The notes under the pieces are model-generated. The model ran no database searches, was not told where the DNA came from, and was given only the letters and a program-made list of their open reading frames with translations. From IMG/VR virus record IMGVR_UViG_3300023184_000027, positions 62,001 to 126,000 of that record: a stretch of DNA of 64,000 bases; one strand, written 5' to 3'. A program made the position numbers and the translations under genes. Below, piece by piece: positions 8,871-23,554 of the stretch (the first letter of the stretch is position 1; the number at the start of each line of letters is the position of its first letter).

Positions 8871-8893
8871 ATCATTATTTTTTAAAATGGGGG

Positions 8894-10348: not shown

Positions 10349-10379
10349 CAAAGATAATGATAATTTTTAATAATCCAAA
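10349..10379 (-). promoter_or_regulatory. Bacteroidetes-type promoter TTTG-N19-TATCTTTG
   Basis: TTTG at 10379-10376 and TATCTTTG at 10356-10349, upstream of the LRR gene. Confidence 0.7.
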
Positions 10380-11234
10380 TTAAATTTTATAATTCATAAT
10401 TAAAATTTCTTCACCCATTGTTTGTGTCTTACCCTTCTTAGCCGCAGCCGCTTTTGCAAATAATTTTCTCTCCCACTGATATTGATTCTCCGGAAACCAC
10501 ACCTGTAATTGTGGAAAATCATAGTAAGACAACGAGAACTTCCCTTGAATACCTTTTAAAGTATCCGCCAATCTTTCGTGGTCTTCTCTTCCAAAATCAT
10601 GGTTAGAATAATAACTACCTTCACCCACAATGTAATAGGGTGGGTCAACATAAAAATAACTTGTAGGACCATCATACTTCTCTATAACCGTTTGGAAATC
10701 CATATTTTCAATATGTGTTATACTTTCAAATAATTTTTGCCAGTTTGGTTTCTTTAATTTGTTTTTGAATGATGTAAATTTTGAATGGTAATTACCTTTT
10801 AAATCTATAAATTTTGATTTAGATGGATTGGCACCTGAAAAAACCTGAGTTAACACATAGACATACTTCGCAGCTATCTCATAATTTGGGTCTTCACCAA
10901 TAACTAAATCATCTGAATAAATTTCTTTTTGAAACTTATCGAAATTTTCTTTACAAATAGGATTAGTTGGGACGACATTTTTCTCCTGAACCACCAATTT
11001 CTCACATTCTTCTAACAATCGTCTATGATTAACCACACAACGATACAGATTGTGATTGAGGGAATTAAAGTCGTTATAAACCACTTTTTTTAGATTAGAG
11101 TATTCCTCTAACTTCATTCCAAAGAATATCCAAAATTGACCTGAAAATGGTTCACAATATGTCTCAATGTCTTTTGGGATGAATGGAACTATGAATGTTT
11201 GCATTTTACTCTTACCACCTATATAACTTATCAT
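10380..11234 (-). CDS. Dam-family (D12 class) N6-adenine DNA methyltransferase
   Basis: YIGGKSK, YCEPFSG, YNDFN, ENMDF and FYVDPPY motifs in alpha-class order. Confidence 0.9.
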   Translation of the reverse strand: MISYIGGKSKMQTFIVPFIPKDIETYCEPFSGQFWIFFGMKLEEYSNLKKVVYNDFNSLNHNLYRCVVNHRRLLEECEKLVVQEKNVVPTNPICKENFDKFQKEIYSDDLVIGEDPNYEIAAKYVYVLTQVFSGANPSKSKFIDLKGNYHSKFTSFKNKLKKPNWQKLFESITHIENMDFQTVIEKYDGPTSYFYVDPPYYIVGEGSYYSNHDFGREDHERLADTLKGIQGKFSLSYYDFPQLQVWFPENQYQWERKLFAKAAAAKKGKTQTMGEEILIMNYKI

Positions 11235-11333
11235 AATTTTTGTTTTTTATAAATATAAGAAATAAAAAGTGTAAAAGCAAGTTTTTCTTTTAAAATTTTT
11301 TCACTATATTTGATATAAATTAATATTATTTAT

Positions 11334-11552
11334 ATGGAAACAATAGAAGCACAAATTATCGAAGAAAAAGACATTAAAACAACAGAAAAAATTAATCAAA
11401 ATACAAAGGACGAAAAATCAGGTTGTAAATCTTGCAAAAAGAAAGGAATATCAAACACCGATTGGCTTATGATAATCCTTTCATCTTATATTTTATTCTC
11501 ATCAGTTTATGGTACAATAAAATTGATTAAAGAACTTATGTTATTATTCTAA
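11334..11552 (+). CDS. Small membrane protein with a GCKSCK motif
   Basis: CxxC followed by a C-terminal hydrophobic helix; TATTTAT immediately before the ATG. Confidence 0.7.
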   Translation: METIEAQIIEEKDIKTTEKINQNTKDEKSGCKSCKKKGISNTDWLMIILSSYILFSSVYGTIKLIKELMLLF

Positions 11553-11554
11553 AA

Positions 11555-12478
11555 TTACTTACGAGAGAATTTAACATTTAATTTTATAAACAAATCCCCA
11601 ACATTATTAAACCCTTTGGATTTAACTCTAAGGGGTTTTGTTGTGTCAAAGTCAATCGGCAATTTAACCGATATATTACCTTTTGGATGACTAACATCTA
11701 AAGTATCTTTCTTTATTGACTCTAAATCAAAAAAGGCATTAAACACTAAATCATTACCAAGTTTTTCAAAATTGTTTTCAGGTGAAACTTTAATCCTTAA
11801 AACTAAATTTCCGTAAATTCCATTATGGAAATCACCTTTTCCTTGCAATCTTAAAAATTGACCATCATCCACAGCATGAGGTAATTTAATTGATAAATTT
11901 TCAATAGAACTTTTGGTTGTTTCTCCATTACAAGACCCACAAGTTCTTGAATATGTAAACCCATTTCCATTACAAGAATTACAAACTTGTCTCACCATCT
12001 GAATAAACATACCAGTACCAATTCTTTGAATAGTAAATCCTTCTCCTCGGCAAGTACCACAATTTACCCTATCACCACCACTACCATTACAACCACCACA
12101 TTTATGTTTTCTACTATATGTTATTGTTTTATCAGAACCATTATAACTTTCTAAAGCCCCAACCACAACTTCAATTACTTTATCCGGAACTGATGGTCTT
12201 CTTTGAGAGTTCATATTATTAAACATATCTTCAAATGGGTTTCCACCACCACCAAAAGGATTAAAACCACCACCAAAAGGATTTGACCTTTGATTATCGT
12301 ATTGTTGGCGTTTATCGTTGTCCCCTATCGTATCAAACGCTTCAGAAATTTCTTTAAACTTATTCTCATCACCACCTTTATCCGGATGATGCTCCACCGC
12401 CAATTTTCTATAGGATTTTTTAATCTCTTCTTGGGTAGCCGTTTCATTAACCCCTAATGTCTCATAAAAATTTTTCAT
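11555..12478 (-). CDS. dnaJ: DnaJ (class A) co-chaperone
   Basis: J-domain with HPD, G/F-rich region, four CxxCxGxG-type repeats and a C-terminal substrate-binding domain. Confidence 0.95.
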   Translation of the reverse strand: MKNFYETLGVNETATQEEIKKSYRKLAVEHHPDKGGDENKFKEISEAFDTIGDNDKRQQYDNQRSNPFGGGFNPFGGGGNPFEDMFNNMNSQRRPSVPDKVIEVVVGALESYNGSDKTITYSRKHKCGGCNGSGGDRVNCGTCRGEGFTIQRIGTGMFIQMVRQVCNSCNGNGFTYSRTCGSCNGETTKSSIENLSIKLPHAVDDGQFLRLQGKGDFHNGIYGNLVLRIKVSPENNFEKLGNDLVFNAFFDLESIKKDTLDVSHPKGNISVKLPIDFDTTKPLRVKSKGFNNVGDLFIKLNVKFSRK

Positions 12479-12532
12479 ACTTATTTACTTATATTTAATT
12501 TAAAACTAATCTATTTAATAACAACTATCAAC

Positions 12533-13174
12533 ATGAATTACTTAATTGTTCTATTCAAAAATAAAATAAAAAAGAAAATAATCAATAAATTTAAGACACA
12601 TAAAAAGTCTGATGATTTATTTATTACCTTATCTAATCAAAGTAATGATGTTATTTTTGAAAAAAAGTATACGAATGGGGATGAATGTAGTTATGAATTA
12701 GCAATGTTGGAGAGGTCATCCGGAACTTTTATCCCTGTGTACTTAAAAGATGAGTTAGGTCGACAAATTAAAGTTAATTTAGACGATGGTGATTATACAA
12801 TAACAAAAATAATAACCTATAAAATTGAGGAGACTTTATTAGACACCACCTTAAATAAAAAAATAAACTCTCATGAGTTTATTAAATTGTATTTAGACCC
12901 AGTGGGGTTTAAATTAATGTCAAAATTAAATAATAAAATTATTGTTCAGAATGACGATAAAGTTAATTTATTCATTTTAAAAAATGAGTATGATTCCTCT
13001 CGTTTTATAGAATCTATTTCAAATAAATTTATATCAGAAAAAAGAATGGATTGTATGTTCATTAAAGATTGTTCTACACCCCAAAAAAAATCCCTGTATA
13101 ATTTGTTAATTAATCAGGGGTTTTCAAAAGACTACCTTCTTCGGTATTCAACAACTCATCCAGTAAAAAAATAA
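12533..13174 (+). CDS. Hypothetical protein
   Basis: 213-aa ORF divergent from dnaJ. Confidence 0.7.
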   Translation: MNYLIVLFKNKIKKKIINKFKTHKKSDDLFITLSNQSNDVIFEKKYTNGDECSYELAMLERSSGTFIPVYLKDELGRQIKVNLDDGDYTITKIITYKIEETLLDTTLNKKINSHEFIKLYLDPVGFKLMSKLNNKIIVQNDDKVNLFILKNEYDSSRFIESISNKFISEKRMDCMFIKDCSTPQKKSLYNLLINQGFSKDYLLRYSTTHPVKK

Positions 13175-13376
13175 ATTCAGTGTTTGAAATATCAATTTTA
13201 AATTGTTTATAATTTCTGTCAACATCTCTAAAATTTTTTTGAACTGTTTTATAATCTTTTTCTTTAAGTTCAAAAGCTATCATACATTTCCCATCAGGAA
13301 ATAAATTTTCAATAGCATCAGATATCATCGCTAACTTTTGAATTACTCCATCAACACTTTTTTTATTCTCATCCAT
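13110..13376 (-). CDS. Hypothetical protein
   Basis: ORF in a tightly packed minus-strand run. Confidence 0.65.
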   Translation of the reverse strand: MDENKKSVDGVIQKLAMISDAIENLFPDGKCMIAFELKEKDYKTVQKNFRDVDRNYKQFKIDISNTEFIFLLDELLNTEEGSLLKTPD

Positions 13377-13534
13377 AAGGTTAGTTTTTCCGGTATTATT
13401 TGTTTTGGAAGAATATCTTCCTTTTTAATTTTAGCAATGTCATTAATTAATCTTGATTTTTCATTATCTAAATTAATTTCATCTTTTTTAAGTTCATTCT
13501 GATACCACTCTAGGTGTTTCAAGCTCTTCTTCAT
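13343..13534 (-). CDS. Hypothetical protein
   Basis: 63-aa ORF overlapping both neighbours. Confidence 0.55.
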   Translation of the reverse strand: MKKSLKHLEWYQNELKKDEINLDNEKSRLINDIAKIKKEDILPKQIIPEKLTLWMRIKKVLME

Positions 13535-13922
13535 TGTCTTCTAGTTCAATTTTATCAGTTTTTATATTAAATTTTAATTTTTTTAAATTATTCAAATTTT
13601 GTTTTTCAAAAATAGTTTTTAATTCATCAACTTTATATTGGAAGAGTTTATCTTTTTCTTCTCTGTCCAAATTATACTTAATAATGTTTCGTAAATTCTC
13701 TGAAGTCTTTTCAATATTATCTTCATTTATTTCACTAACAAACGAAAAAAATCTATGGTCCGGTACTTTACTCTCTTGTTCCATTAATTTATCTTCCTCA
13801 ACATATTTTTTAGGTAATTTCCAATCCATAGGAAACGCAACATCAAAACTTAAATATTTTTCAATTTTTCTAACTGATTGTAGATAAGGGAATAATGTTG
13901 AAAATTCTTTATATAAACTCAT
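13494..13922 (-). CDS. Hypothetical protein
   Basis: Likely start MSLYKEF at 13922, directly after the stop of the upstream gene. Confidence 0.7.
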   Translation of the reverse strand: MSLYKEFSTLFPYLQSVRKIEKYLSFDVAFPMDWKLPKKYVEEDKLMEQESKVPDHRFFSFVSEINEDNIEKTSENLRNIIKYNLDREEKDKLFQYKVDELKTIFEKQNLNNLKKLKFNIKTDKIELEDNEEELETPRVVSE

Positions 13923-13924
13923 AA

Positions 13925-14110
13925 TTAATATTTTATAATATAGGTTAAACAATAGGATATTGCTAATCCCAAATAGATAAGTTCCCCATTATACAATAAA
14001 AACCTTTTTGGTGGGTTTGATATTAGGGAACCTATTAATCTAGTTACCGTCCGTAAAACGGTTAAGACTGAAAAGATAAATATAAACAATAAAATTGTTT
14101 TAATATCCAT
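13925..14110 (-). CDS. Small two-helix membrane protein
   Basis: Two hydrophobic stretches in 61 aa. Confidence 0.65.
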   Translation of the reverse strand: MDIKTILLFIFIFSVLTVLRTVTRLIGSLISNPPKRFLLYNGELIYLGLAISYCLTYIIKY

Positions 14111-14112
14111 AA

Positions 14113-14289
14113 CTATTCGTCTTTTTTTCTTTCAGATAAAATTTCTTTTCGTAAAGTGTCTAAAGATTTTTTTAAATCTTGAGATAATTTTCTAGCTCTA
14201 GTACCAGCACTTTTATTACCTGCGAAGAATTTTGTAGCATCCACTGATAATTCTTCAGTTAAAGCTTTAATTTGTTCTAATGTTTCCAT
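14113..14289 (-). CDS. Histone H1-like Hc1-family nucleoid protein (58 aa, not in the ORF track)
   Basis: METLEQIKALTEELSVDATKFFAGNKSAGTRARKLSQDLKNLLDTLRKEILSERKKDE. GNKSAGTRARK is the signature of the Hc1-like family seen in Bacteroidetes and Chlamydia. Confidence 0.8.
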   Translation of the reverse strand: METLEQIKALTEELSVDATKFFAGNKSAGTRARKLSQDLKKSLDTLRKEILSERKKDE

Positions 14290-14370
14290 GTCAAAGTTTG
14301 TTAATAATTTATTTTTATTTCTTTAAAAGTAAATTTATTTATACCATTGTAAACACTATATAGACTTTTT

Positions 14371-14838
14371 TTATGTTTTGAGACTATTATTCAACACTTT
14401 GTATATCATTAAAATCATCTCTAAATCAGATTTTGTAAATGTTTTTTCTAAATTAAATAAATCTGTGAAAAATTCACCGACTGAAAGTCTAACTTTTTCC
14501 TCCTTTTGATGATAAAAAATTTCATCAAAAAAAGATTCAAAATAATCATAATGACCACCTTTAAGATGGAAATTAATATTTTCTTTTTTAAAATTTTCAA
14601 TTGTTTTCTTCCAACACCAATCAAAATGATTTAAATTATCTTTATCAGACAAAATTATTTTTGTTTCGTTAGAAATAGTGTTTTGACCTAAATAGGTCTG
14701 TAAAATTAAAGAGTTAAGTGAGTGGGAAAAGTCTGAATATAGTTCTAATTTTTCGGGAATAACATTGTTAACCCTAAACCAGACTTCTACATCTTCGGGG
14801 GACATTGGCTTTGTTATATAATTAAAAAAATTCTCCAT
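14371..14838 (-). CDS. Hypothetical protein
   Basis: 155-aa ORF. Confidence 0.75.
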   Translation of the reverse strand: MENFFNYITKPMSPEDVEVWFRVNNVIPEKLELYSDFSHSLNSLILQTYLGQNTISNETKIILSDKDNLNHFDWCWKKTIENFKKENINFHLKGGHYDYFESFFDEIFYHQKEEKVRLSVGEFFTDLFNLEKTFTKSDLEMILMIYKVLNNSLKT

Positions 14839-14857
14839 AGAGTTTGTCTATGGAGAA
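14824..14857 (-). terminator. Terminator-like hairpin overlapping the start codon of 14371..14838
   Basis: 11-bp stem TTCTCCATAGA/TCTATGGAGAA, 5-nt loop, followed by TTTTTTT on the minus strand. Confidence 0.65.
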
Positions 14858-14885
14858 ATTATAATTCATTTTATTTTTTTGTAAA

Positions 14886-16154
14886 TTATTGAGTCTTACC
14901 TTTGTAAGTAATTAGTGATTTCATTCTATCAAACTCTTCTGATATTTGTTTTGATTGTTTAGGCTCTAACGACTCTAATTTAGCCATTAATTTAGACCCT
15001 TCATCTTCACCAGAATTGTCAGTAACAATAGGTTGCGGCGCTTTATTATAAGCCTTCTTTTTAATTTGACCCAATATATTCTTTTTCCTAATTGTATTTC
15101 GTTTTTTGTTAACATCCGATTCACCAGTGTTAGCCCATTCCGGATTATTACCCGTTCTTGAAGACCCTTCAATGTTATCAGTTATCCACTCTTCATTTGG
15201 ATGTATTTCATCATATACTAAATTTTCTTGACCCGCAGCCGTTAAATTATCTGTATACTCTTCAACAGCCCCTGACGGGATATAAGCCTTTTTACTCATT
15301 TTAGATAACTCACCATTTCCTTTTGGAAATATTTTAGGTTCTGTTGAGTACTCACCTTTAGAACCGTCTTTTAAATATTCTTTCATTTTTTTAGTAACAG
15401 ATTTAAGATAATCATCATTTTCTTTACCAGATTTTTTATGAACTTGAATTTGTTTATCTAAACCTTTAGGTGTTCCCATTGATTTAATGTTTTTTTCTTT
15501 ACTCTGTTCCATAATAACACTTTCAATTAATTCAATCATTTGACTTTCAGTTAATTTAACAGACTCTTTACGTTTACCCTCTTCACCCATCTCTAATTTT
15601 TTGTTTTTTCTTAACATTTTAAAATCTTCAGTGTCTAATCGGTTATTTTTATTTTTATCTAAAACTTTTTGATTTCCTTTTAAAGATTCTTCCATCTCCG
15701 ATTTTTTACTTTTTCTCAACATTTTAAAATCTTCAGTGTCTAACCTATTGTTTTTATTTTTATCCAAAACTTTTTGATTTCCTTTTAAAGATTCATTAAC
15801 GTCTGTTCCACAAAATTTCTCAATTCTATCTTTAGGAGCGTTGTTTTCTTTATGCCATTTACAAGCCTCTTCATCATAATCATAATTACCATCGGAATCA
15901 CTATCACCTTCTTCTTCTTCAATATAGTCAAACGATTGACTTTTTGGGAATTTTTTTGAGACATCGTAAATTCCTTCACCACACTCCGAACATTCTCCTT
16001 CATACATCATTCCACCACACTCACAAATATTAGACTCATTCTCATCAACACTGCTTTTTATTTTAGAGACTAAATCATCAGCTCTATTTTCTAAAGTTTC
16101 ACTTAAAATTTTAGATACTAAATTTTCTAAATAAGTTGTATTTAATTTTTTCAT
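14886..16154 (-). CDS. Charged, probably head-associated protein with two EF-hand-like repeats
   Basis: ESLKGNQKVLDKNKNNRLDTEDFKMLR occurs twice; CECGG...CSECG Cys cluster. Confidence 0.7.
   Translation of the reverse strand: MKKLNTTYLENLVSKILSETLENRADDLVSKIKSSVDENESNICECGGMMYEGECSECGEGIYDVSKKFPKSQSFDYIEEEEGDSDSDGNYDYDEEACKWHKENNAPKDRIEKFCGTDVNESLKGNQKVLDKNKNNRLDTEDFKMLRKSKKSEMEESLKGNQKVLDKNKNNRLDTEDFKMLRKNKKLEMGEEGKRKESVKLTESQMIELIESVIMEQSKEKNIKSMGTPKGLDKQIQVHKKSGKENDDYLKSVTKKMKEYLKDGSKGEYSTEPKIFPKGNGELSKMSKKAYIPSGAVEEYTDNLTAAGQENLVYDEIHPNEEWITDNIEGSSRTGNNPEWANTGESDVNKKRNTIRKKNILGQIKKKAYNKAPQPIVTDNSGEDEGSKLMAKLESLEPKQSKQISEEFDRMKSLITYKGKTQ
15615..15794. repeat. Direct repeat, 75-nt unit with 105-nt period (EF-hand-like peptide)
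   Basis: Copies at 15615-15689 and 15720-15794. Confidence 0.85.
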
Positions 16155-16177
16155 TTTTTGTTTTTATTATAAATATA

Positions 16178-16954
16178 TTATTTTTTATTTAAAAGCATTT
16201 TTTCATACTCATAAGAGATAATTGTTTTAATAACATTTTCACTTATATTATGTTTTTCACTAATATTTTGAATAGCTTGTTTAACCATATCATTCTCATA
16301 TAGTTTTAAAGACTTAATATCACCTTGATTACAATATGGAAATTTTTTACATTTTTTCTTAACTTGGACAAATTTTCCTCCCGGGATTTGAGTTTTAGAA
16401 GCACCTCTCCAATCTTTTTTACTTGGTGATTTAGCCCAAGCAGCAGGAGTTTCATATGAACCTGAAGAACCTGAACCAGTTGATTCAGTAGCTTCAACTT
16501 TTTTTACGTCATCTTCTTTAACACAATTCGGAACTTTCTTTTTACCTTTATCTTTTGTACCAATTTGTTTATAACCTTTCCAACATTCTTCTTCCATTTC
16601 TTTTTTTGTTGTTGAAAATAGTGGAGTTTCAAATCCTCCTGCAGAAGACGCACCCATAGATTCAACAGCTTCTTCCTTTTCACCCATAATAGGTAAGGAT
16701 GATGATAATTTACCAACAGGTTTTTTTAATTTAGTATCCCCAACTAATTTAGTGGCAATTCCTTTATTAATAGGTCTCTTAATCATGTCTAATTTTTTAT
16801 TTTTTTTATTTGACTCCCCTAAATCTTTTGTAATGTCTTGAGCCGCTATTATTGTATCAACAACATAACCATCTCTATAAGGAGCTGTTTGGGTCACCTC
16901 ACCATTAATCTTCTTTTTTAAATCATCAGACATTTCGTCTTCTTCTATTTTCAT
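16178..16954 (-). CDS. Hypothetical protein with CWKGY...VPNCV motif and a duplicated E-S-x-G-x-x-S-x-G-x-(F/Y)ETP motif
   Basis: Motifs read from the translation; the CWKGY..VPNCV motif recurs in large-phage proteins. Confidence 0.7.
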   Translation of the reverse strand: MKIEEDEMSDDLKKKINGEVTQTAPYRDGYVVDTIIAAQDITKDLGESNKKNKKLDMIKRPINKGIATKLVGDTKLKKPVGKLSSSLPIMGEKEEAVESMGASSAGGFETPLFSTTKKEMEEECWKGYKQIGTKDKGKKKVPNCVKEDDVKKVEATESTGSGSSGSYETPAAWAKSPSKKDWRGASKTQIPGGKFVQVKKKCKKFPYCNQGDIKSLKLYENDMVKQAIQNISEKHNISENVIKTIISYEYEKMLLNKK

Positions 16955-16957
16955 TTT

Positions 16958-17203
16958 TTAAGCGTTTTTAAGTCTTGATTCCCAAAAACTTCGTTGATTC
17001 CACATTACACTATATAATTCTCTAAATGACCTAATAACAATATCCTTAACCTCACCCTCAAGTTTACCTCGTTTTATTTCACGACCGAGTATTTCAATAA
17101 GTTTTTGTTCGTATTGTTTAATTGTTGTAGTACCAAAGAAATCTTTAATTTCTTTTCGCATCATAACCTCAATTTCTTTTTTCTCCGCTGCAGTAAACGC
17201 CAT
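16958..17203 (-). CDS. Hypothetical protein
   Basis: 81-aa ORF in an operon. Confidence 0.7.
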   Translation of the reverse strand: MAFTAAEKKEIEVMMRKEIKDFFGTTTIKQYEQKLIEILGREIKRGKLEGEVKDIVIRSFRELYSVMWNQRSFWESRLKNA

Positions 17204-17204
17204 T

Positions 17205-17609
17205 TTATTTAAGTATTAATAAGTATGTCGAAGTTATTATCCCAGCAAATGTTCCAGCTTTCCATAAAAAAGATTTAAATCTTTGACCGGTAAGTTCTTT
17301 ATGTAATTTATCTGATAATTCTTCAGATATTTTCAATTGCTCATCTTTTTTACCCAACATAAAATTATTATTAGAATCTTTCTCTTCTAATAATGAAATT
17401 TGGGTATCTTTTTGTTTTTCCCTTTCTTCGGTTTTAACTAATTTTTCTTGAGTTAATTTTAACTCAATGTCGCACCCATCACCCTTAATAATATCTTTAA
17501 TTACTAATTTAGCGATTGGTGTTTTAATTCTTACTTTCGTTGTATCTGTTTGTGAAAAACTGCTCAAGCTCGTTAGCAGTAAGAGTATCAACACTATTAA
17601 CTTTTTCAT
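17205..17609 (-). CDS. Signal-peptide, coiled-coil, C-terminally anchored protein (spanin-like candidate)
   Basis: MKKLIVLILLLLTSLSSFS-Q signal peptide, heptad-rich middle, C-terminal hydrophobic helix. Confidence 0.6.
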   Translation of the reverse strand: MKKLIVLILLLLTSLSSFSQTDTTKVRIKTPIAKLVIKDIIKGDGCDIELKLTQEKLVKTEEREKQKDTQISLLEEKDSNNNFMLGKKDEQLKISEELSDKLHKELTGQRFKSFLWKAGTFAGIITSTYLLILK

Positions 17610-17883
17610 TGGTTTGTTTTTTAATTATTGTTATATTATTATCTATGTGGTTAATATCTTTTGTTAAATTAACAACATTACCTTTAACAGAATCAATTTT
17701 AATATCAATACCTTCGTTAACTGATTTAGTTGAGTCAATTACCGTTTGTAAAGATTCTATTTTATCTTTATACAAGTTAACATCAGTTTTAATCCCGTTT
17801 GTTGTGAATATATTATACCCACACAAAACAACGACAATCACTAATAAAATATTCTGCTTATTATTACCAACAATATCTCCCAT
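17524..17883 (-). CDS. N-terminal TM plus coiled-coil protein (spanin-like candidate)
   Basis: ILLVIVVVLCGYNIF followed by coiled coil; overlaps the next gene by 86 nt. Confidence 0.6.
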   Translation of the reverse strand: MGDIVGNNKQNILLVIVVVLCGYNIFTTNGIKTDVNLYKDKIESLQTVIDSTKSVNEGIDIKIDSVKGNVVNLTKDINHIDNNITIIKKQTNEKVNSVDTLTANELEQFFTNRYNESKN

Positions 17884-17888
17884 TATTA

Positions 17889-18488
17889 TTATGTTTTAAT
17901 TGTTTTTTTTCTTGATGCTAAAATTTTAGCCCACTTTGATTTAAATTTTTCATAAAAAGTTTTTAACTTATTAATCATTTCTAAAAATTCGTCATCAGCC
18001 TTTATCATTTCACCATTAATATAAATACCACTTTCTTCACCAATTGATAAGAAAAAATCAACATCATAGTCAATTAATTTTCCCGACCACTCAACATTGT
18101 TTGGATAAATATTTAATTTGTTAAAATCTACTAAATCAGACACTTCAGCTATAAATTCATCCATTGTTTCTTGGAAAGCAATTTTTTCATCTGTAGTTAA
18201 TTCTAAATCTGTTTGTTCTTTACCGTGTAAAACTAAAATTCCACCTGAAATTCTATATCCTTGTGTTTTATCGTCTTTACTTTCATTATCATCTTCAATT
18301 GTATCTTCAACAGATTTAGTTACATCATATTTTTTAGTGATATCACCTGAAGACACTTCGGTTTCTTGTTCAGTAATTACACCATATTTTTGTCTAATAT
18401 TATTAATATCTTCATTAATGGTATCATTGGATAACATTTTTCTAGAAGCGTTAAGTAAATTTCTTATTTCATCATGTGAATTGTTCAT
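17889..18488 (-). CDS. Hypothetical protein
   Basis: 199-aa acidic ORF. Confidence 0.75.
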   Translation of the reverse strand: MNNSHDEIRNLLNASRKMLSNDTINEDINNIRQKYGVITEQETEVSSGDITKKYDVTKSVEDTIEDDNESKDDKTQGYRISGGILVLHGKEQTDLELTTDEKIAFQETMDEFIAEVSDLVDFNKLNIYPNNVEWSGKLIDYDVDFFLSIGEESGIYINGEMIKADDEFLEMINKLKTFYEKFKSKWAKILASRKKTIKT

Positions 18489-19077
18489 ATTCTATTTTTT
18501 TTAAAAATTCTTCAAAATTAAATGCGGGACTAACATCGGTAAAATTAGTATTAAAATTACTTTTAGTTACGATTCCACAATATTTTTCAATACCGGTTAT
18601 TTTTGTATTATGTTCGACTATTTGACGTTTAATTGACATATCTTTAAATAATTCATTACATAGTTTTGATGTACTATCAATCTGTACTGAAGTATAAGGT
18701 TGCCAAAAATAATAGTCTCTCCATTTTTTTTCAAACACATTACCCTTATAAATATCACCAATCCAGTTAACGTAATGATTAGTTAAAGGTTCTTTGTGTA
18801 ACCACCCTAAATTTTCTAAAGAAACAATTATAGAATTTCTATTTATATTGGGATTTGAGAAATAGTCGGAGTGCCCTTCATTCCCTAATAACTGTAGTAT
18901 TTTACCCTCTCTGGTTATAATATAATTGGGTATTCTGTTATATTTACCGTTATTTCTATATTTTAATAATTGTAAATAATCGTTAATATTTCTTGAAGTG
19001 TGAGTTAGAATTATTTGATATTTCTTTTTTTGTTTTCCTTTAGGTTTAAAATCACCATAATTAATAATGTCCACCAT
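18472..19077 (-). CDS. Amidase_2 (AmpD/PGRP)-fold protein, Zn ligands apparently degenerate
   Basis: IILTHTS...PNYIITREGKILQLL...NINRNSIIVSLENLG...YTSVQIDSTSKLC...GIVTKSN..TDVSPAF follows the N-acetylmuramoyl-L-alanine amidase pattern. Confidence 0.75.
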   Translation of the reverse strand: MVDIINYGDFKPKGKQKKKYQIILTHTSRNINDYLQLLKYRNNGKYNRIPNYIITREGKILQLLGNEGHSDYFSNPNINRNSIIVSLENLGWLHKEPLTNHYVNWIGDIYKGNVFEKKWRDYYFWQPYTSVQIDSTSKLCNELFKDMSIKRQIVEHNTKITGIEKYCGIVTKSNFNTNFTDVSPAFNFEEFLKKIEYEQFT

Positions 19078-19104
19078 ATAATATAATGTAAAAAATTTAT
19101 TTGG

Positions 19105-20094
19105 TTATGATGTTTTTACATAACTTAATCTAACAATATCGTCAACAACTTCCTCGATTGGTTCTTCAACGACATCTTCTATTGGTTCTTCAACGACATC
19201 TTCTATTGGTTCCTCTACGACATCTTCTATTGGTTCTTCAACGACATCTTCTATTGGTTCCTCTACGACATCTTCTATTGGTTCCTCTACGACATCTTCT
19301 ATTGGTTCCTCTACGACATCTTCTATTGGTTCCTCTACGACATCTTCTATTGGTTCTTCAACAACTTCATCTATTGGTTCCTCTACAACATCTTCTATTA
19401 GTTCCTCTACGACATCTTCTATTGGTTCCTCTACGACATCTTCTATTGGTTCTTCAACAACTTCTTCTATTAATTCCTCAATTGGTTCATCTATTGGTTC
19501 TTCAATAACATCTGATTGTACAACATTACTCATATAATCCAATTCAGTTATAGTAAATTCATCAATTATAATATCTGAAGATTCTTCAATAACATTAACA
19601 GGCATCACATCTTTATTATTTTCATCAATTAATTCATCATATTTTACAAAAAAATGTAAAGATGTTAATGATATAATTGGTAATAAACCACCACTTAAAA
19701 AGGCTAACCATCTTTTTAATGATACTATATCAGTAAGGTCTGAACCAAACATTTCCCATATAGGCCCTGTCAACTCTACCCACGACTTAAATAACACACT
19801 ATTAGCATCAATCTCTTTATAGGAGAAGAATATATTACCAATCATTTGTATGAAAGTCACCATTCCAAACATAAACCAAACACCACCTTTAATTTTATTT
19901 GTGGCTGCCAACAAAGCTGTCATAGCACCTATTTCAATAGCGATTGATAAATATATTGCCCAACTAATTGGATTTGTTAAATTATACCACGAAACAACGT
20001 GTGATATTGATATTCCAGCAACCAAAAAAATTGGTACTAAAAACATAGCTCTGATTGGATGAGCCTTAACCCATTCTAAAATTATTTTATTCAT
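19105..20094 (-). CDS. Multi-pass membrane protein with a long acidic EEPIEDVV repeat tail
   Basis: About four hydrophobic helices in the first 150 aa, then about 14 octapeptide repeats. Confidence 0.8.
   Translation of the reverse strand: MNKIILEWVKAHPIRAMFLVPIFLVAGISISHVVSWYNLTNPISWAIYLSIAIEIGAMTALLAATNKIKGGVWFMFGMVTFIQMIGNIFFSYKEIDANSVLFKSWVELTGPIWEMFGSDLTDIVSLKRWLAFLSGGLLPIISLTSLHFFVKYDELIDENNKDVMPVNVIEESSDIIIDEFTITELDYMSNVVQSDVIEEPIDEPIEELIEEVVEEPIEDVVEEPIEDVVEELIEDVVEEPIDEVVEEPIEDVVEEPIEDVVEEPIEDVVEEPIEDVVEEPIEDVVEEPIEDVVEEPIEDVVEEPIEDVVEEPIEEVVDDIVRLSYVKTS
19150..19500. repeat. 24-nt tandem repeat (tcttctattggttc(c/t)tc(t/a)acgaca), about 14 copies
   Basis: Read directly from the sequence. 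Confidence 0.9.
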
Positions 20095-20360
20095 TTCTCT
20101 ATTTTAGAAATTTCTTTATCAATCTCCGATTGTCTATTAACATCCATAATTTTTCTATCAGTAGATTGAATCATTCTTTTTTCAGTTTTTAAACCTTCAA
20201 TTTTAATTTCTCTTTTTAAATTAACATCTAACAATTCAACGTTTTTAGTTAATTTTTCAATTTTAGTGTTAGTACCACAAGTTTTAAAAAAAACAATTAC
20301 CACCAGTAATGTCATTATTCTAATACCCCAAGCGTCGATAAAATTTAATATTGTTTTCAT
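20091..20360 (-). CDS. Small TM/coiled-coil protein, possible lipoprotein (FFKTC)
   Basis: Hydrophobic helix ending in Cys, then coiled coil; ATGA overlap with the next gene. Confidence 0.65.
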   Translation of the reverse strand: MKTILNFIDAWGIRIMTLLVVIVFFKTCGTNTKIEKLTKNVELLDVNLKREIKIEGLKTEKRMIQSTDRKIMDVNRQSEIDKEISKIEK

Positions 20361-20389
20361 AATTTTTAAATAAGTTTTACTATAAATGT

Positions 20390-20421
20390 AAAAAACCTTC
20401 TATCATAATAAATAGAAGGTT
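20390..20421 (-). terminator. Intrinsic terminator after the sigma gene
   Basis: 10-bp stem AACCTTCTAT/ATAGAAGGTT plus a T-run. Confidence 0.75.
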
Positions 20422-20430
20422 TCTTTTTTT

Positions 20431-21231
20431 TTACATATAATCGAAAAGTATCGAGCTTTCATTCCTTAATTTTCTTAAGGCTTTCTCCTTAATCTGCCTC
20501 ACTCTTTCTTTAGTGAGATTAAAATCCCCACCAATGTCTTCTAAAGTCCTTGGAGTACCTGTCAGTCCAAAATAATCACCAACAATAGTTTTTTCTCGAT
20601 TATCTAAAACATCTAATAAAGAAATTAATTGTTTTTTTAATTCATCTTTAGTGTTAAAGATTGCGTCCGGCATATCCGCCTGTTCATTCTTTATAATATC
20701 AACCAAAGTATCACCATCCTCATTAATACTCATATCTAAATCAACAATAGATGGTAAATTTTGAAACTTATCCGAAAGTTTACCCCCATTAGACTCTATT
20801 TCTTTTTTAGCTCTCTGTAAATCCTGAACAACATTAACCGGAAGTCTAATAGTTCTAGCATTATCATTTAATGATTGGAGGATGGATTGTTTAACCCACC
20901 ACACAGCGTATGATATAAATCTTAAATCTCTAGACCAATCAAAATGATTAATGGCTTTCATAAGACCTAAATTACCCTCAGCAATTAAATCGGGAAAGTC
21001 TAACCCTTGGTTTTGATATTGTTTTGCCACGGTAATAACAAAACGCAAATTTCCCTCAAGTAATTCTTTATTAATTGATTTCAATTCTTTTTCCGTTAGA
21101 TTACCCGAACTAATCATTTTTGATAACTCCCTTTCCCTGTCTGGAGTCATCACTTTAATTTTACGAATGTCCTTTAAATACAATTGTATTTCTTCTTGAT
21201 TAATAGGAATCCCCGAATTTTTTTCTTTCAT
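20431..21231 (-). CDS. Sigma-70 family factor resembling the Bacteroidetes primary sigma (no region 1.1)
   Basis: NLRFVITVAKQYQNQG, DLIAEGNLGLMKA, FISYAVWWVKQSI, RTIRLPVN, and region 4 TLEDIGGDFNLTKERVRQIKEKALRKLR. Start MKEKNSG at 21231 preferred. Confidence 0.95.
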   Translation of the reverse strand: MKEKNSGIPINQEEIQLYLKDIRKIKVMTPDRERELSKMISSGNLTEKELKSINKELLEGNLRFVITVAKQYQNQGLDFPDLIAEGNLGLMKAINHFDWSRDLRFISYAVWWVKQSILQSLNDNARTIRLPVNVVQDLQRAKKEIESNGGKLSDKFQNLPSIVDLDMSINEDGDTLVDIIKNEQADMPDAIFNTKDELKKQLISLLDVLDNREKTIVGDYFGLTGTPRTLEDIGGDFNLTKERVRQIKEKALRKLRNESSILFDYM

Positions 21232-21232
21232 A

Positions 21233-21799
21233 TTATTTTGAGTATTGATTAAGTAATTGTAATTCTTCTTTTGATAATGATTCAATTCCCGCGTCCGCTA
21301 ATTTATCAAATAATTCATCAAATGTTGGTTTTCTTTTTTTATTTTTAAGTTTACTAATATCGTCATCTTCATCTTCATCAACAAATTCAGAAAAATCTAA
21401 AAAGAAGTCAGTTCTAATGTTATTCATTAACATATTTCGTACCTCATAGTCATTTTCATCACATATTTTGTTTTTACCTGACATATAGTCATTAACACCA
21501 TCGTTAAATAGATGTTTAGCAACTTCATCTGGTAATCCGTATGACAAATTGTCATCTGTGTATGGTAATAAAATATAACTTATTGTGTCATAATCTAATA
21601 TCATATCAACATAGTCTTTAACATCCAAATAGGAATCTAAAGTTGAGATTGTGTACACTGTTGATTCCGGTCCAAAGTAAAAATTGACCTTTGGAACATC
21701 CGAAAGAACACTTAATTCTTCAGCAATTTGTTCTGCGAATTCTTGGGGGTTGTCGTTTTTTGTAAATACAAATAAAATGTATTTGGTTAAGTTCTCCAT
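21233..21799 (-). CDS. Hypothetical protein
   Basis: 188-aa ORF; TACATTTG (-7-like element) at 21838-21831. Confidence 0.75.
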   Translation of the reverse strand: MENLTKYILFVFTKNDNPQEFAEQIAEELSVLSDVPKVNFYFGPESTVYTISTLDSYLDVKDYVDMILDYDTISYILLPYTDDNLSYGLPDEVAKHLFNDGVNDYMSGKNKICDENDYEVRNMLMNNIRTDFFLDFSEFVDEDEDDDISKLKNKKRKPTFDELFDKLADAGIESLSKEELQLLNQYSK

Positions 21800-21917
21800 A
21801 TGTTATACGTTTAAGTTATAAATTATGTTACAAATGTAGTGAAATTATTTAGATATACTTAATAATTAGATAAAATTTTTTTCTTCCATAGGGTTATGAG
21901 TCATAACAAATAAATTA

Positions 21918-22607
21918 TTATAAATAAGTATCTGAATTAAACACTCTAACGTTTTCTGAGGTATGTTTTGAAAAGGATAATAAATCTTCTTTAGTATATG
22001 AATCGCCATCAATTAAAACAAAAAATGATATGTTTTCATTAGGGTTTGATTCACAAAATTTTAAAGATGACTTTAAAAATTGAACTATTTCGGATTTAGC
22101 ACTATTTTGTCCCCCACCTTGGTTAAAGGTTGTTTTTCCTAACCCATAATCAATATACCCATTTTCTTTTTCAACTTTATAATCAAAACTTCGAGAAGTT
22201 TCCCCTTCTATTTTTTTATACGTAAGTTTTGTCGAATTTTTACTGAATCTAGGTCCAATAGAATTACTCATTTTTTCAATTTTAACTCCCTTAGACTTTA
22301 AATGTTCTATTTGAACTTTTTCACTGATATTTTGTCGGGTTATTTCAATGGCAAATTGAACAATTGCATATGCATTTTTAACGGTTGTAATATCTATCAA
22401 AACATCGTTTACTACCTTATCAAGGTAGTTTTTTTTAATGTAGTTTTCAATTTTAACCAACAAGTTTTTTTGTGGTTTAGTTTTACCAATACCTCCGTTG
22501 TTCAATATTTGTTGAGACCACTTTACAACATTTTTTTGGTTTTCTTTAACTTTTAATTTGTGGGTATTCCAATATCTATCGGAATGTGTTAATATCTCTG
22601 TCTTCAT
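21918..22607 (-). CDS. Probable type II restriction endonuclease (PD-(D/E)xK-like)
   Basis: RQNISE...SFDY...GKTTFNQGGGQN...FVLIDGDSY resembles the K-x-T-x-x-x-GGAQDNQ family of MTase-linked endonucleases as I recall it; lies directly downstream of an MTase. Confidence 0.55.
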   Translation of the reverse strand: MKTEILTHSDRYWNTHKLKVKENQKNVVKWSQQILNNGGIGKTKPQKNLLVKIENYIKKNYLDKVVNDVLIDITTVKNAYAIVQFAIEITRQNISEKVQIEHLKSKGVKIEKMSNSIGPRFSKNSTKLTYKKIEGETSRSFDYKVEKENGYIDYGLGKTTFNQGGGQNSAKSEIVQFLKSSLKFCESNPNENISFFVLIDGDSYTKEDLLSFSKHTSENVRVFNSDTYL

Positions 22608-22620
22608 CTCATTTTTTTTA

Positions 22621-22652
22621 CAAAACTACAAAAATAAATTTAAAGAATCAAA
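22621..22652 (-). promoter_or_regulatory. Bacteroidetes-type promoter TTTG-N20-TAGTTTTG
   Basis: TTTG at 22652-22649 and TAGTTTTG at 22628-22621, just upstream of the endonuclease ATG. Confidence 0.7.
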
Positions 22653-23517
22653 TTTTTTTATTTAAACTTTCTTTGGTTATGTAATTATTTAATATGGTTT
22701 CATCTTTTACAACCTCTATTAATCTTCTATCACAAATACTACAATAAGTAAAATCTAGTTCAGAACCAATCCAATTTCTCCCCAATTGTATTGATAACTT
22801 AGCGGTAGTTCCTGAACCCATAAAAGGGTCATATACTAAATCATCTTCTTTAGTCCACGTAATAATATGTTTTGCCGCCAATTCTTCCGGAAAAATTGCG
22901 GGATGTTCAAACGCCACAATATCTTTAGTAGACTTATTCATCCCATTTTTAATTAACCATATATTATTCTCAATACCATATTCATTAACCGGTTTACCAT
23001 TAAACCCTGGAATCATTTCACCATCCGCGTTTCTAAATTTCCTTGAATTCCTTACCGCTCCTGCTGTAATATTTTTCTTCATAATTGGGTTAAAAGTGTT
23101 TGGTTTACCTTTTGAGAAAACAAACATATATTCAAAAGTCTGATTATATCTAGTCTTTTGTGGAAAAGGTGTTCCAGTTTTTTGATATATCATTGTATCA
23201 TACAAATCAAACCCACATTTTTTAAAAAAAAGTGCTTGTCTAAAAGAAGTTCCGGTTTCACTACCTTTATTTGTCGCATCACCCACAACCCAAACAACTA
23301 CACCGCCATTTTTAGTTATTCTAAATAATTCTTTTGCAATATCTTCAAACGGAAATGAATACCCATTAAATTCTGTTTTATTTCCACTTAAATGGGTATT
23401 GTAAGTCCTTAAATCGTCATAAGGTGGAGATGTTAAAGTTAAATCTATTAACCCATCATTTATTTTAGACATAGTTATTAAACAGTCTTCATTATATATT
23501 TTGTTATATTCTATCAT
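22648..23517 (-). CDS. Beta-class N4-cytosine/N6-adenine DNA methyltransferase
   Basis: TSPPY (motif IV, SPPY suggests m4C) precedes HPAIFP and YDPFMGSGTT (motif I). Confidence 0.92.
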   Translation of the reverse strand: MIEYNKIYNEDCLITMSKINDGLIDLTLTSPPYDDLRTYNTHLSGNKTEFNGYSFPFEDIAKELFRITKNGGVVVWVVGDATNKGSETGTSFRQALFFKKCGFDLYDTMIYQKTGTPFPQKTRYNQTFEYMFVFSKGKPNTFNPIMKKNITAGAVRNSRKFRNADGEMIPGFNGKPVNEYGIENNIWLIKNGMNKSTKDIVAFEHPAIFPEELAAKHIITWTKEDDLVYDPFMGSGTTAKLSIQLGRNWIGSELDFTYCSICDRRLIEVVKDETILNNYITKESLNKKI

Positions 23518-23554
23518 ATATCAATTATAGGTATTTTGATTTATTTATTCAACC

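What the first reader, a model, noticed from the sequence alone, without database searches (positions are those of the whole stretch)
10380..23517. GATC appears absent from the window despite a Dam-family methylase
Seen by eye, not computed: I found no GATC in any stretch scanned across the 64 kb, while TCGA, GGCC, CCGG, AGCT, GTAC and CATG occur. At about 30% G+C, well over 100 sites would be expected (rough estimate). Known: avoidance of a palindrome reflects selection by a nuclease. Inference: the Dam-like enzyme targets a different site and the host restricts GATC regardless of methylation, or the phage endonuclease (21918..22607) cuts GATC to degrade host DNA while the phage genome is immune through avoidance.
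Basis: partly seen in the sequence, partly recalled or inferred. Interest (0 to 1): 0.62.

Follow-up and report, generated by a model that had tools for sequence, protein, structure and literature searches.

The report
Jumbo phage purged of GATC sites
An uncultured ~300-kb bacteriophage has removed every GATC from its DNA, most likely to escape bacterial enzymes that cut that site; its 'Dam-like' methylase is not a true GATC methylase, so the case is a striking example of a known strategy rather than a paradox.

Summary
GATC occurs 0 times in the 64-kb window (about 170 expected) and 0 times in the whole 207,952-bp viral contig (about 575-595 expected).

- **Mechanism of loss.** The purge uses synonymous codon choice: Asp before a C-starting codon is never GAT (0/217, against 84% elsewhere).
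- **Relatives.** The phage belongs to a large clade of ~300-kb, ~30% G+C phages, probably infecting Bacteroidota. About 40% of members are GATC-free, and others have no CATG, CCGG or TCGA. The GATC-free state changed at least 8 times on the tree. This is classic restriction-site avoidance.
- **The D12 methylase (10380-11234).** It is a core gene, intact in GATC-free and GATC-rich relatives alike, with dN/dS about 0.09. It scores below NCBI's Dam cut-off and lacks the residues that read GATC. Its closest solved relative is the N4-cytosine methylase M.CbeI.
- **The ORF at 21918-22607.** It is a restriction-endonuclease-like protein of the Tsp45I/DpnII superfamily, paired with the methylase at 22648-23517. 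The pair is a recently swapped-in cassette, absent from four complete GATC-free relatives, so it did not cause the avoidance.
- **Open lead.** Nine of ten contigs carrying a homologue at 33% identity or more have no GATC (the tenth has 2 of 41 expected), so a GATC specificity is not excluded.

The parts
1..64000 (.). Whole window, and the whole 207,952-bp record, devoid of GATC
   Evidence: 0 observed against about 168-180 expected in the window; 0 against 574-594 in the record. Codon context shows synonymous avoidance.
10380..11234 (-). D12-class (alpha) DNA methyltransferase with a DPPY motif. It is a core gene of the phage clade and not a canonical GATC Dam.
   Evidence: Pfam PF02086 at 2e-22. 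NCBIfam dam gives 59.1 bits, below the 114.85 cut-off. The best solved relative is 7M6B, which is M.CbeI, an N4-cytosine MTase. It is intact in 79 of 80 related loci. dN/dS has a median of 0.09 among GATC-free phages.
21857..23546 (-). Variable island holding a two-gene R-M cassette, replaced by a different cassette in the 93%-identical relative G001
   Evidence: Synteny breaks exactly here between G000 and G001. G001 and G040 carry other methylase plus unique-ORF pairs at the same place, between the SbcC-like gene and the sigma-factor gene.
21918..22607 (-). Putative type II restriction endonuclease (P0001, 229 aa) of the Tsp45I/DpnII-like PD-(D/E)xK superfamily; specificity unknown
   Evidence: No Pfam, PHROG or PDB sequence hit of its own. 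The AF2 model has pLDDT 87. Fold matches are to restriction enzymes: BstEII Z 7.8, PspGI 7.2, Cfr10I 6.3. ESM Atlas structure hits reach DpnII/BanI/Tsp45I clusters at TM 0.55-0.58. Of 118 profile-found homologues, 16 hit Pfam Tsp45I and 2 hit DpnII. In 10 of the 12 homologue contexts looked up, it lies next to an N6_N4 methylase (the exceptions are).
22648..23517 (-). Beta-class N6_N4 DNA methyltransferase with an SPPY motif (N4-cytosine-like), partner of the endonuclease
   Evidence: Pfam PF01555 at 1.6e-41. The best solved relative is M.MboIIA, followed by N4C methylases. The SPPY motif is at residue 30. dN/dS is 0.07 against the copy in L085.
23555..25924 (-). SbcC-like nuclease subunit, the conserved flank of the island
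   Evidence: PHROG 77 at 7e-40. It is 61-97% identical in all six compared genomes.
20431..21285 (-). Phage sigma-70 family factor, on the conserved flank on the other side of the island
   Evidence: Pfam Sigma70 r1_2, r2 and r4; conserved in all compared genomes.

Best explanation
The window is part of an uncultured jumbo phage whose true genome is about 300 kb, probably infecting freshwater Bacteroidota. Its lineage has eliminated every GATC by point substitutions, mostly synonymous. GATC-directed nucleases met during infection made each remaining site costly. These would be host type II enzymes of the MboI/DpnII or Sau3AI kind, possibly together with methyl-dependent DpnI-like enzymes. Site loss is a passive anti-restriction strategy and needs no methylase. 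The D12-family methylase in the window is a conserved core gene of the clade. It acts on some other sequence, possibly as an N4-cytosine enzyme, and its presence is unrelated to the GATC purge. The endonuclease-like ORF and its neighbouring methylase form a mobile type II R-M cassette. The cassette landed recently in a hot spot between the sbcC-like gene and the sigma-factor gene of a genome that was already GATC-free. Shown: the absence, its synonymous character, its patchy distribution among relatives, the non-Dam character of the methylase, and the recent arrival of the cassette. Inferred: that the selecting nuclease is host-encoded, and the host phylum.
For: (1) GATC is 0 of about 575-595 expected in the record. 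It is 0/901, 0/856, 0/845 and 0/943 in four complete relatives, while two others keep 538 and 628 sites. (2) Codon context in the GATC-free genomes: Asp before a C-starting codon is never GAT (0/217, against 84% otherwise). Ile after a G-ending codon is never ATC (0/514). Ser after an NGA codon is never TCN (0/67). GATC-bearing relatives use these combinations freely. (3) Among 72 non-redundant loci and genomes of the clade, GATC is purged in 31, CATG in 7, TCGA in 5, ACGT in 3 and CCGG in 2. G013 lacks both GATC and CATG (0/766), and G021 lacks both GATC and CCGG (0/208). (4) The GATC-free state needs at least 8 changes on the methylase tree. Between relatives L049 and L050, 0 of 50 aligned GATC sites survive, against 15-40% for control 4-mers. 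(5) The D12 methylase is one copy per genome and intact in both classes. Its dN/dS is about 0.09 within GATC-free phages. It scores below the Dam cut-off, and its closest solved relative is M.CbeI, an N4C methylase. The Dam residues that read GATC are R124, L122, P134 and N120 in EcoDam. The positions aligned to the corresponding DpnM hairpin are not conserved. (6) The endonuclease ORF is absent from 49 of 50 related records, including complete GATC-free genomes. It sits in a swapped 1.7-kb island. (7) No DpnII, MutH/Sau3AI or DpnI family gene is found in the record. (8) GATC-directed nucleases of all three kinds occur in Bacteroidota: 3, 3 and 6 strong hits among 401 species representatives. 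The phage RNR is closest to Bacteroidota homologues. (9) Complete or near-complete elimination of type II sites is documented for about a tenth of prokaryotic virus genomes (PMC6286503).
Against: The host is not identified, so no cognate GATC nuclease can be named. Recognisable GATC nucleases were found in only about 3% of the sampled Bacteroidota species. The target of the D12 methylase is unknown, and an unusual enzyme that still methylates GATC on host DNA is not excluded by sequence alone. Nine of the ten contigs found that carry a homologue (33% identity or more) of the endonuclease ORF have no GATC, and the tenth has 2 of 41 expected. Shared hosts could explain this, but so could a GATC-directed phage nuclease.
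Confidence: 0.75

Rival explanations
1. The cassette endonuclease (21918-22607) recognises GATC. A phage without GATC can carry it without harming itself and uses it against host or competing phage DNA, so carriage of the nuclease and absence of GATC are functionally linked. One variant is that the partner methylase marks GATC and the nuclease cuts the marked site.
For: The fold and transitive homology place it in the Tsp45I/DpnII restriction-enzyme superfamily, which includes the GATC cutters DpnII and MboI. Contigs carrying homologues at 33% identity or more are GATC-free or nearly so: 0/574, 2/41, 0/31, 0/6, 0/44, 0/26, 0/5, 0/64, 0/9 and 0/4. Several of these are different phages that share few genes with the clade. 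Homologues of the partner methylase that lack this nuclease sit almost only in GATC-bearing relatives: 10 of 24 against 1 of 25, Fisher p 0.002.
Against: The GATC-free state is much older and wider than the cassette, which is absent from G001 (93% nucleotide identity), G008, G013 and G021, all with 0 GATC. The family is nearer to Tsp45I (GTSAC) than to DpnII: 16 hits against 2. The hhalign match to DpnII has only 7% probability. The partner methylase has an N4-cytosine-type SPPY motif and is not DpnA-like. It is under strong purifying selection (omega 0.07) in a genome that offers it no GATC. More distant homologues sit in GATC-bearing contigs (3/9, 12/25). If the host's own GATC system drove the purge, host GATC would be methylated and resistant to a DpnII-type enzyme. 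Phages that share hosts also share genes, which alone could produce the association.
Confidence: 0.2
2. The purge is driven mainly by methylation-dependent nucleases (DpnI-like or type IV). Phage DNA grown in Dam-positive hosts would carry G(m6A)TC and be cut in the next host. Because both methylated-GATC and unmethylated-GATC cutters circulate, only site loss works against all of them, which is why the phage carries no GATC methylase.
For: DpnI-family genes were the most frequent of the three GATC nuclease families in the Bacteroidota sample: 6 strong hits in 401, against 3 and 3. No clade member examined encodes a recognisable true Dam; there is only the one non-canonical D12 gene per genome. 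Avoidance of GATC in phages whose hosts carry type IIM enzymes is documented (PMC6286503).
Against: There is no information on host Dam status. The pattern of sister lineages purging CATG, CCGG or TCGA instead looks like ordinary type II restriction pressure. Sequence alone cannot distinguish this model from the best explanation, and the two may act together.
Confidence: 0.25
3. The D12 enzyme is after all a GATC adenine methylase. It is kept to methylate host DNA, for example for takeover or regulation, rather than the phage genome.
For: It belongs to Pfam D12 and has DPPY. It is a conserved core gene under purifying selection even where the phage has no GATC, so it has some substrate.
Against: It scores below the curated Dam threshold. 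E. coli and T4 Dam are not detected even with a family profile, and DpnM only at 1e-6. The hairpin residues that read GATC are not conserved. The nearest solved relative methylates cytosine. GATC-bearing relatives with the same enzyme still show GATC depletion (O/E 0.53-0.59), which is unexpected if their sites were protected.
Confidence: 0.07
4. The absence is not selective. It would instead reflect assembly or library artefact, mutational bias, or amino-acid and codon usage.
For: None found, beyond the general low G+C content.
Against: Dinucleotide and Markov models expect about 170 sites in the window. Same-composition words are present, for example GTAC at 142 and CTAG at 113. Independent assemblies agree, while close relatives keep GATC. 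The avoidance is context-specific at the codon level.
Confidence: 0.02

Closest known systems
Restriction-site avoidance in lytic phages. The general survey is Rusinov et al. 2018 (PMC6286503). From my own knowledge, the textbook GATC case is staphylococcal phage K and other Twort-like phages, which lack GATC, the Sau3AI site.
   Same: Complete loss of a 4-bp palindrome that is a common type II target. The loss is achieved by synonymous changes, occurs in a lytic dsDNA phage, and needs no methylase.
   Different: The genomes here are about 300 kb, with 0 of about 850-950 expected sites. The trait is patchy within one uncultured clade. Sister lineages have completely purged CATG, CCGG or TCGA instead or as well, and there were at least 8 state changes. 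The host is unknown and probably Bacteroidota rather than Firmicutes.
Dam-family GATC adenine methylases (E. coli Dam, T4 Dam, DpnM)
   Same: Pfam D12 fold, alpha-class motif order, and a DPPY catalytic motif.
   Different: The window's enzyme scores below the NCBIfam Dam cut-off and lacks the hairpin residues that read GATC. No GATC substrate exists in its own genome. It is closer to M.CbeI.
M.CbeI of Caldicellulosiruptor bescii (PDB 7M6B), an alpha-class N4-cytosine methylase. From my own knowledge, its site is GGCC.
   Same: It is the best solved sequence relative (E 4e-12 over the full length). It has the same D12 architecture and DPPY, and shares an FSG motif where Dam has the FNG/YNG hairpin start.
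   Different: Identity is only about 25%, so the phage enzyme's base and site specificity cannot be transferred from it. GGCC is moderately under-represented in the phage (O/E 0.49), which is neither purged nor clearly protected.
Virus-encoded type II R-M systems. From my own knowledge, the examples are the chlorovirus systems such as R.CviAI/M.CviAI on GATC. The relevant enzyme families are Tsp45I and DpnII.
   Same: A small PD-(D/E)xK endonuclease gene lies beside a methylase gene inside a viral genome. There is remote homology to the Tsp45I/DpnII families.
   Different: The specificity is unknown. The partner is a beta-class SPPY methylase. The cassette occupies a hot spot where relatives carry unrelated cassettes. 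Chloroviruses protect themselves by methylation, not by site loss.

Membership tests
Dam family (GATC N6-adenine methyltransferase) | D12-class methyltransferase domain with a DPPY motif | tested here: met
   Pfam PF02086 at 2e-22, covering 1-241 of 253 positions. DPPY is at residue 197.
Dam family (GATC N6-adenine methyltransferase) | Score above the curated family threshold (NCBIfam TIGR00571) | tested here: not met
   59.1 bits against a cut-off of 114.85. E. coli and T4 Dam structures were not retrieved even at E up to 1 with a family profile.
Dam family (GATC N6-adenine methyltransferase) | Beta-hairpin residues that read GATC (EcoDam N120, L122, R124, P134) | tested here: not met
   In the HMMER alignments to DpnM, the equivalent positions read S, A, a gap or P, and L. 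They are invariant in that form across GATC-free and GATC-bearing relatives. The DpnM-EcoDam equivalence is taken from my own knowledge.
Dam family (GATC N6-adenine methyltransferase) | GATC substrate present, or methylation of GATC demonstrated | not testable with these tools
   The genome has no GATC. Methylation activity needs a methylome or an enzyme assay.
Restriction-site avoidance (anti-restriction by site loss) | Site count far below a composition-corrected expectation | tested here: met
   0 against 168 +/- 12 in the window; 0 against 574 in the record.
Restriction-site avoidance (anti-restriction by site loss) | Loss achieved at the DNA level (synonymous and context-specific), not through protein composition | tested here: met
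   GAT|C 0/217, G|ATC 0/514 and NGA|TCN 0/67 in G000. The same holds in four other GATC-free genomes and not in GATC-bearing relatives.
Restriction-site avoidance (anti-restriction by site loss) | Variation among relatives consistent with different nuclease exposures | tested here: met
   There are at least 8 state changes for GATC. Other lineages have purged CATG, CCGG, TCGA or ACGT.
Restriction-site avoidance (anti-restriction by site loss) | Host encodes a nuclease for the avoided site | not testable with these tools
   The host is unknown. The only indirect evidence is that DpnII-, Sau3AI- and DpnI-type genes exist in 3, 3 and 6 of 401 Bacteroidota species.
Type II restriction-modification cassette (21918-23517) | Endonuclease gene adjacent to a DNA methyltransferase gene, with the pairing conserved in homologues | tested here: met
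   The methylase abuts the ORF in the window and in 10 of the 12 homologue contexts looked up. Two homologues had no adjacent methylase.
Type II restriction-modification cassette (21918-23517) | Endonuclease fold or family | tested here: inconclusive
   The model has pLDDT 87. Foldseek found no match at E 0.001 or better. VIA Z scores of 5-8 to many type II enzymes lie within the range the tool calls common. Atlas TM is 0.55-0.58 to DpnII/BanI/Tsp45I clusters. Of 118 homologues, 16 hit Pfam Tsp45I, but the ORF itself hits nothing.
Type II restriction-modification cassette (21918-23517) | Sequence-specific cleavage blocked by the partner's methylation | not testable with these tools
   This needs expression and digestion assays.

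The most novel reading that the evidence does not exclude
The small endonuclease at 21918-22607 belongs to a phage-borne nuclease family that is directed at GATC. Only phages that have already lost every GATC can carry it. Site avoidance would then have been turned from a defence into a licence to deploy a GATC-cutting weapon against host or rival-phage DNA, possibly with the partner methylase marking rather than protecting the target.
Probability: 0.2. Interest if true: 0.75.

Novelty: new member of a known kind. Interest (0 to 1): 0.42.

Why it matters
Restriction-site avoidance is well known, so the central finding is not a new principle. It is, however, an unusually clean and large example. 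Genomes of about 300 kb have zero copies of a 4-mer expected about 900 times. They sit in an abundant uncultured clade where relatives have independently erased GATC, CATG, CCGG or TCGA. That makes the clade a natural experiment for three questions: how fast and by which substitutions phages purge sites, how to infer the restriction repertoire of uncultured (probably Bacteroidota) hosts from phage sequence alone, and how to assign specificities to the clade's core and cassette methylases. It also shows that a 'Dam family' annotation should not be read as GATC specificity. The association between one phage-borne endonuclease family and GATC-free genomes is a testable lead.

Tried and rejected
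- **Near-identity DNA search.** The search of the region against deposited phages found no match.
- **ORF 21918-22607 by sequence.** It has no hit in Pfam, PHROGs, NCBIfam or PDB sequences, and only a marginal ShosA hit in PADLOC, E 0.0098. Foldseek against PDB gave nothing at E 0.001 or better.
- **Profile comparison to DpnII.** hhalign of the ORF family against three Bacteroidota DpnII proteins aligned the core motifs, but with only 7% probability. This was treated as a lead, not as proof.
- **Known GATC nucleases in the record.** DpnII, MutH/Sau3AI and DpnI families gave no hit in the held record.
- **Gene-content contrast.** The comparison of GATC-free against GATC-bearing complete genomes produced candidate lists on both sides. 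The two GATC-bearing genomes form their own clade, so the contrast is confounded by phylogeny. The GATC-free-only set contained ClpP, an RNA ligase, an HNH domain and unknowns, with nothing resembling a GATC nuclease.
- **A second, true Dam in GATC-bearing relatives.** Rejected, because each genome has exactly one D12 gene.
- **The cassette methylase as DpnA-like.** Rejected, because similarity is only local and the motif is SPPY rather than DPPY.
- **Partner ORFs at the same island in G001 and G040.** They are not detectably related to the window's endonuclease.
- **More nuclease homologues in IMG/VR.** The broad alignment failed for lack of conserved blocks. A narrower alignment gave only two loci.
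- **Named homologues.** The last word-index search returned no named homologue.
- **Reads.** No reads were laid, and expression or read-level variation was not examined.

Full report
**Observation.** GATC does not occur on either strand of the 64,000-base window. Dinucleotide-preserving shuffles give 168 +/- 12 sites, and none of 100 shuffles comes near zero. Mononucleotide and first- and second-order Markov expectations are 167-180. The window is bases 62001-126000 of a 207,952-bp IMG/VR virus contig that CheckV rates as 71% complete. The whole contig also has no GATC against 574-594 expected, the most extreme 4-mer deviation (z about -24). CATG follows at O/E 0.27, CTAAG/CTTAG at 0.25, CTCAG at 0.38, TCGA at 0.43 and ACGT at 0.48.

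**What the sequence is.** The region 9-25 kb is densely coded on the minus strand.
- Pfam finds a D12-class methyltransferase (10380-11234), a DnaJ (11555-12478), a sigma-70 family factor (20431-21285) and a beta-class N6_N4 methyltransferase (22648-23517).
- PHROGs adds an SbcC-like protein (23555-25924), a baseplate wedge protein and a ribonucleotide reductase elsewhere in the window. An amidase lies at 18472-19077.
- No deposited phage is close at the DNA level. The D12 protein is 48-56% identical to genes of 635-735-kb 'huge phage' records. The baseplate protein is distantly (25%) like that of a Flavobacterium phage.
- The RNR large subunit is closest (41-45%) to homologues in Bacteroidota genomes in nearly all of 80 returned loci.
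- One homologue of the methylase was deposited inside a Bacteroidota MAG.

A Bacteroidota host is thus likely, but it is inferred.

**Relatives show what the absence means.** The D12 gene recovered 196 related viral contigs, and more than 5,600 metagenomic proteins match its profile at E 1e-10 or better. In the 80 fetched loci the gene is intact in 79, at 57-98% identity. GATC content, however, is bimodal. Many loci have 0 of about 50-70 expected sites, and many others are near expectation.

Whole-genome counts (observed/expected) confirm this:

| Genome | Size and status | GATC | Other purged site |
|---|---|---|---|
| G001 | 322 kb, complete, 93% nt identity to the window's genome | 0/901 | - |
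| G008 | complete | 0/856 | - |
| G013 | 308.6 kb, terminal repeats | 0/845 | CATG 0/766 |
| G021 | complete | 0/943 | CCGG 0/208 |
| G034 | 96% complete | 538/1007 | - |
| G040 | complete | 628/1060 | - |

Across 72 non-redundant loci and genomes, GATC is purged in 31, CATG in 7, TCGA in 5, ACGT in 3 and CCGG in 2. AT-only palindromes are never purged. On a maximum-likelihood tree of the methylase, the GATC-free label needs at least 8 changes. Between relatives L049 (60 sites) and L050 (none), which are 73% identical in DNA, none of 50 aligned GATC sites survives. Control 4-mers are conserved at 15-40%.

**The purge is at the DNA level.** In each of five GATC-free genomes:
- Asp followed by a C-starting codon is never GAT (0/217 in the window's genome, against 84% GAT otherwise).
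- Ile after a G-ending codon is never ATC (0/514).
- Ser after an NGA codon is never TCN (0/67).

GATC-bearing relatives use these combinations. This is the signature of selection against the tetranucleotide itself. It is the pattern described for restriction-site avoidance, which reaches complete or near-complete elimination in about a tenth of prokaryotic virus genomes (PMC6286503).

**The 'Dam-family' methylase.**
- It has the D12 domain and DPPY. However, its NCBIfam Dam score (59 bits) is half the curated cut-off.
- Against solved structures, its best match is 7M6B (E 4e-12). DpnM appears only at 8e-6, and E. coli and T4 Dam do not appear at all, even with a family profile.
- 7M6B is M.CbeI, an alpha-class N4-cytosine methylase (PMC8616854).
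- In EcoDam, GATC is read by R124, L122, P134, N120 and Y119 of a hairpin, plus K9 and Y138 (PMC4417163). In the alignments to DpnM, the corresponding hairpin positions of the phage enzyme are S, A, a gap or P, and L. This block is invariant across GATC-free and GATC-bearing relatives.
- Each complete genome has exactly one D12 gene.
- Within phages that have no GATC, its dN/dS is 0.04-0.17, with a median of 0.09. It therefore has a function that cannot be methylation of GATC in phage DNA.

The apparent paradox in the title dissolves: the enzyme is a D12-family member of unknown specificity, possibly a cytosine-N4 enzyme, and not a Dam.

**The 'endonuclease' and its neighbour.**
- ORF 21918-22607 (P0001) has only about ten close homologues. 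In every context recovered for them, each lies directly beside an N6_N4 methylase.
- An AlphaFold model is confident (pLDDT 87). Foldseek gives no match at E 0.001 or better, but its best rows are PD-(D/E)xK nucleases.
- The wide structural search lists many type II enzymes: BstEII Z 7.8, PspGI 7.2 and Cfr10I 6.3, followed by BsoBI, PfoI and Bse634I. These values lie in a range the tool warns is common.
- The ESM Atlas structure search reaches clusters carrying DpnII, BanI_C and Tsp45I domains at TM 0.55-0.58.
- A profile search of 1.8 billion representatives finds 191 relatives. Of 118 scanned, 16 hit Pfam Tsp45I and 2 hit DpnII.
- K158 is invariant. E96, D142, G164-G165, Q167 and D200-G201 are nearly invariant.
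- A direct profile comparison with Bacteroidota DpnII proteins aligns the D..GGG..DG core, but with low probability.

I conclude that this is a restriction endonuclease of the Tsp45I/DpnII-like superfamily with unknown specificity.

**The cassette is recent and not the cause of the avoidance.**
- The genome is collinear with G001 at about 93% identity, except that window 21857-23546 is replaced there by a different 1.4-kb segment.
- At this island, between the SbcC-like and sigma-factor genes, three different pairs are found. G000 has methylase plus P0001. G001 has a 27%-identical methylase plus an unrelated 194-aa ORF. G040 has an unrelated 229-aa ORF plus a 46-48%-identical methylase.
- P0001 is found in only 1 of 50 related records. 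It is absent from the complete GATC-free genomes G001, G008, G013 and G021.
- No DpnII, MutH/Sau3AI or DpnI family gene is detectable in the record.

The phage nuclease therefore cannot explain a GATC-free state that is shared by lineages lacking it.

**A lead that remains.** The contigs I could fetch that carry a P0001 homologue of 33% identity or more have these GATC counts: 0/574, 2/41, 0/31, 0/6, 0/44, 0/26, 0/5, 0/64, 0/9 and 0/4. Some are phages with little else in common with this clade. Homologues at 30-32% identity sit in contigs with GATC (3/9, 1/7, 12/25). Conversely, homologues of the partner methylase without P0001 occur in 10 of 24 GATC-bearing records but only 1 of 25 GATC-free records.

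Shared hosts and shared gene pools could generate both patterns. In addition, the methylase is under purifying selection (omega 0.07) in a genome with no GATC, which argues that its site is something else. A GATC-directed cassette that only GATC-free phages can carry is nevertheless not excluded, and I give it about 0.2.

**Plausibility of host pressure.** In 401 Bacteroidota species representatives, full-length DpnII/MboI-type genes occur in 3, Sau3AI-like genes in 3 and DpnI-like (methyl-dependent) genes in 6. GATC-directed nucleases of both polarities therefore exist in the candidate host phylum, although they are rare per species representative. R-M content is strain-variable, so this is weak support. 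The coexistence of cutters of methylated and of unmethylated GATC would make site loss, rather than a Dam, the only universally safe strategy. That is an inference.

**Verdict.** The best explanation is long-standing restriction-site avoidance in a clade of uncultured jumbo phages. The 'Dam' is a misleading family label. The endonuclease-like ORF is part of a recently acquired R-M cassette. The phenomenon is known, so this is a new and unusually extreme member of a known kind, with one open and testable lead.

Noticed in passing
Outside the window: G000:C1:48368-50275 (-), which is locus L003:1432-3339 (-): The clade's second core methylase is a beta-class SPPY enzyme of about 285 aa in six relatives. 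In this genome it is a 635-aa ORF whose two domain halves are separated by about 350 aa, with weak Intein_splicing and LAGLIDADG hits. This is probably an intein with a homing endonuclease inside a phage DNA methylase.
   Followed up: partly
window 1-2900 (-), ORFs 806-1459 and 2147-2875, and further upstream in the genome: There are dense arrays of 9-bp-periodic repeats (units of 18, 27, 36 ... 135 bp) in coding sequence. On the coding strand they look like Gly-X-Y (collagen-like) repeats. Similar arrays recur at several places in G000 and G001, and they explain several over-represented words such as CTGAAG and GGAAC.
   Followed up: partly
whole record G000; relatives G013, G021, L018, L021, L042, L076: Other sites are also avoided. 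In this genome CATG has O/E 0.27, CTNAG 0.32, TCGA 0.43 and ACGT 0.48. Relatives have completely purged CATG (G013, 0/766), CCGG (G021, 0/208) or TCGA (several loci). These counts could be used to infer host restriction repertoires.
   Followed up: partly
window 21857-23546, with the same island in G001 (97452-98874) and G040 (about 278381-279978): The interval between the SbcC-like gene and the sigma-factor gene is a hot spot. It holds a different methylase plus small-ORF pair in each lineage. G040's 229-aa partner has an SFD..EIK motif, and G001's partner is a unique 194-aa ORF.
   Followed up: partly
window 21918-23517 compared with L085:9090-10690 and L086:5799-7395: The two cassette genes have discordant divergence. 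Against L085 the methylase has dS 0.47 while the nuclease has dS 0.11. Against L086 the methylase is 82% identical while the nuclease is 57% identical. This suggests recombination within the cassette.
   Followed up: no
G034 and G040 (GATC-bearing relatives): Even where GATC is kept (O/E 0.53-0.59), Ile ATC after a G-ending codon is strongly avoided (3-4% against 12-17%), while GAT|C and NGA|TCN are used freely. The depletion is frame-specific and unexplained.
   Followed up: no
window 11555-12478 (-), 20431-21285 (-), 57392-59809 (-); G021 143091-143771 and 153315-154397: The clade carries host-like functions. These include a full three-domain DnaJ, a sigma-70 factor and a class I RNR. Some members also have ClpP, a T4-type RNA ligase and a cREC_REC domain protein.
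   Followed up: no
contig of P0009 (JGI 3300059473, no DNA available): One homologous methylase-nuclease pair is followed directly by a GmrSD_N + HNH protein, a type IV modification-dependent nuclease. This would form a small defence or anti-defence cluster.
   Followed up: no
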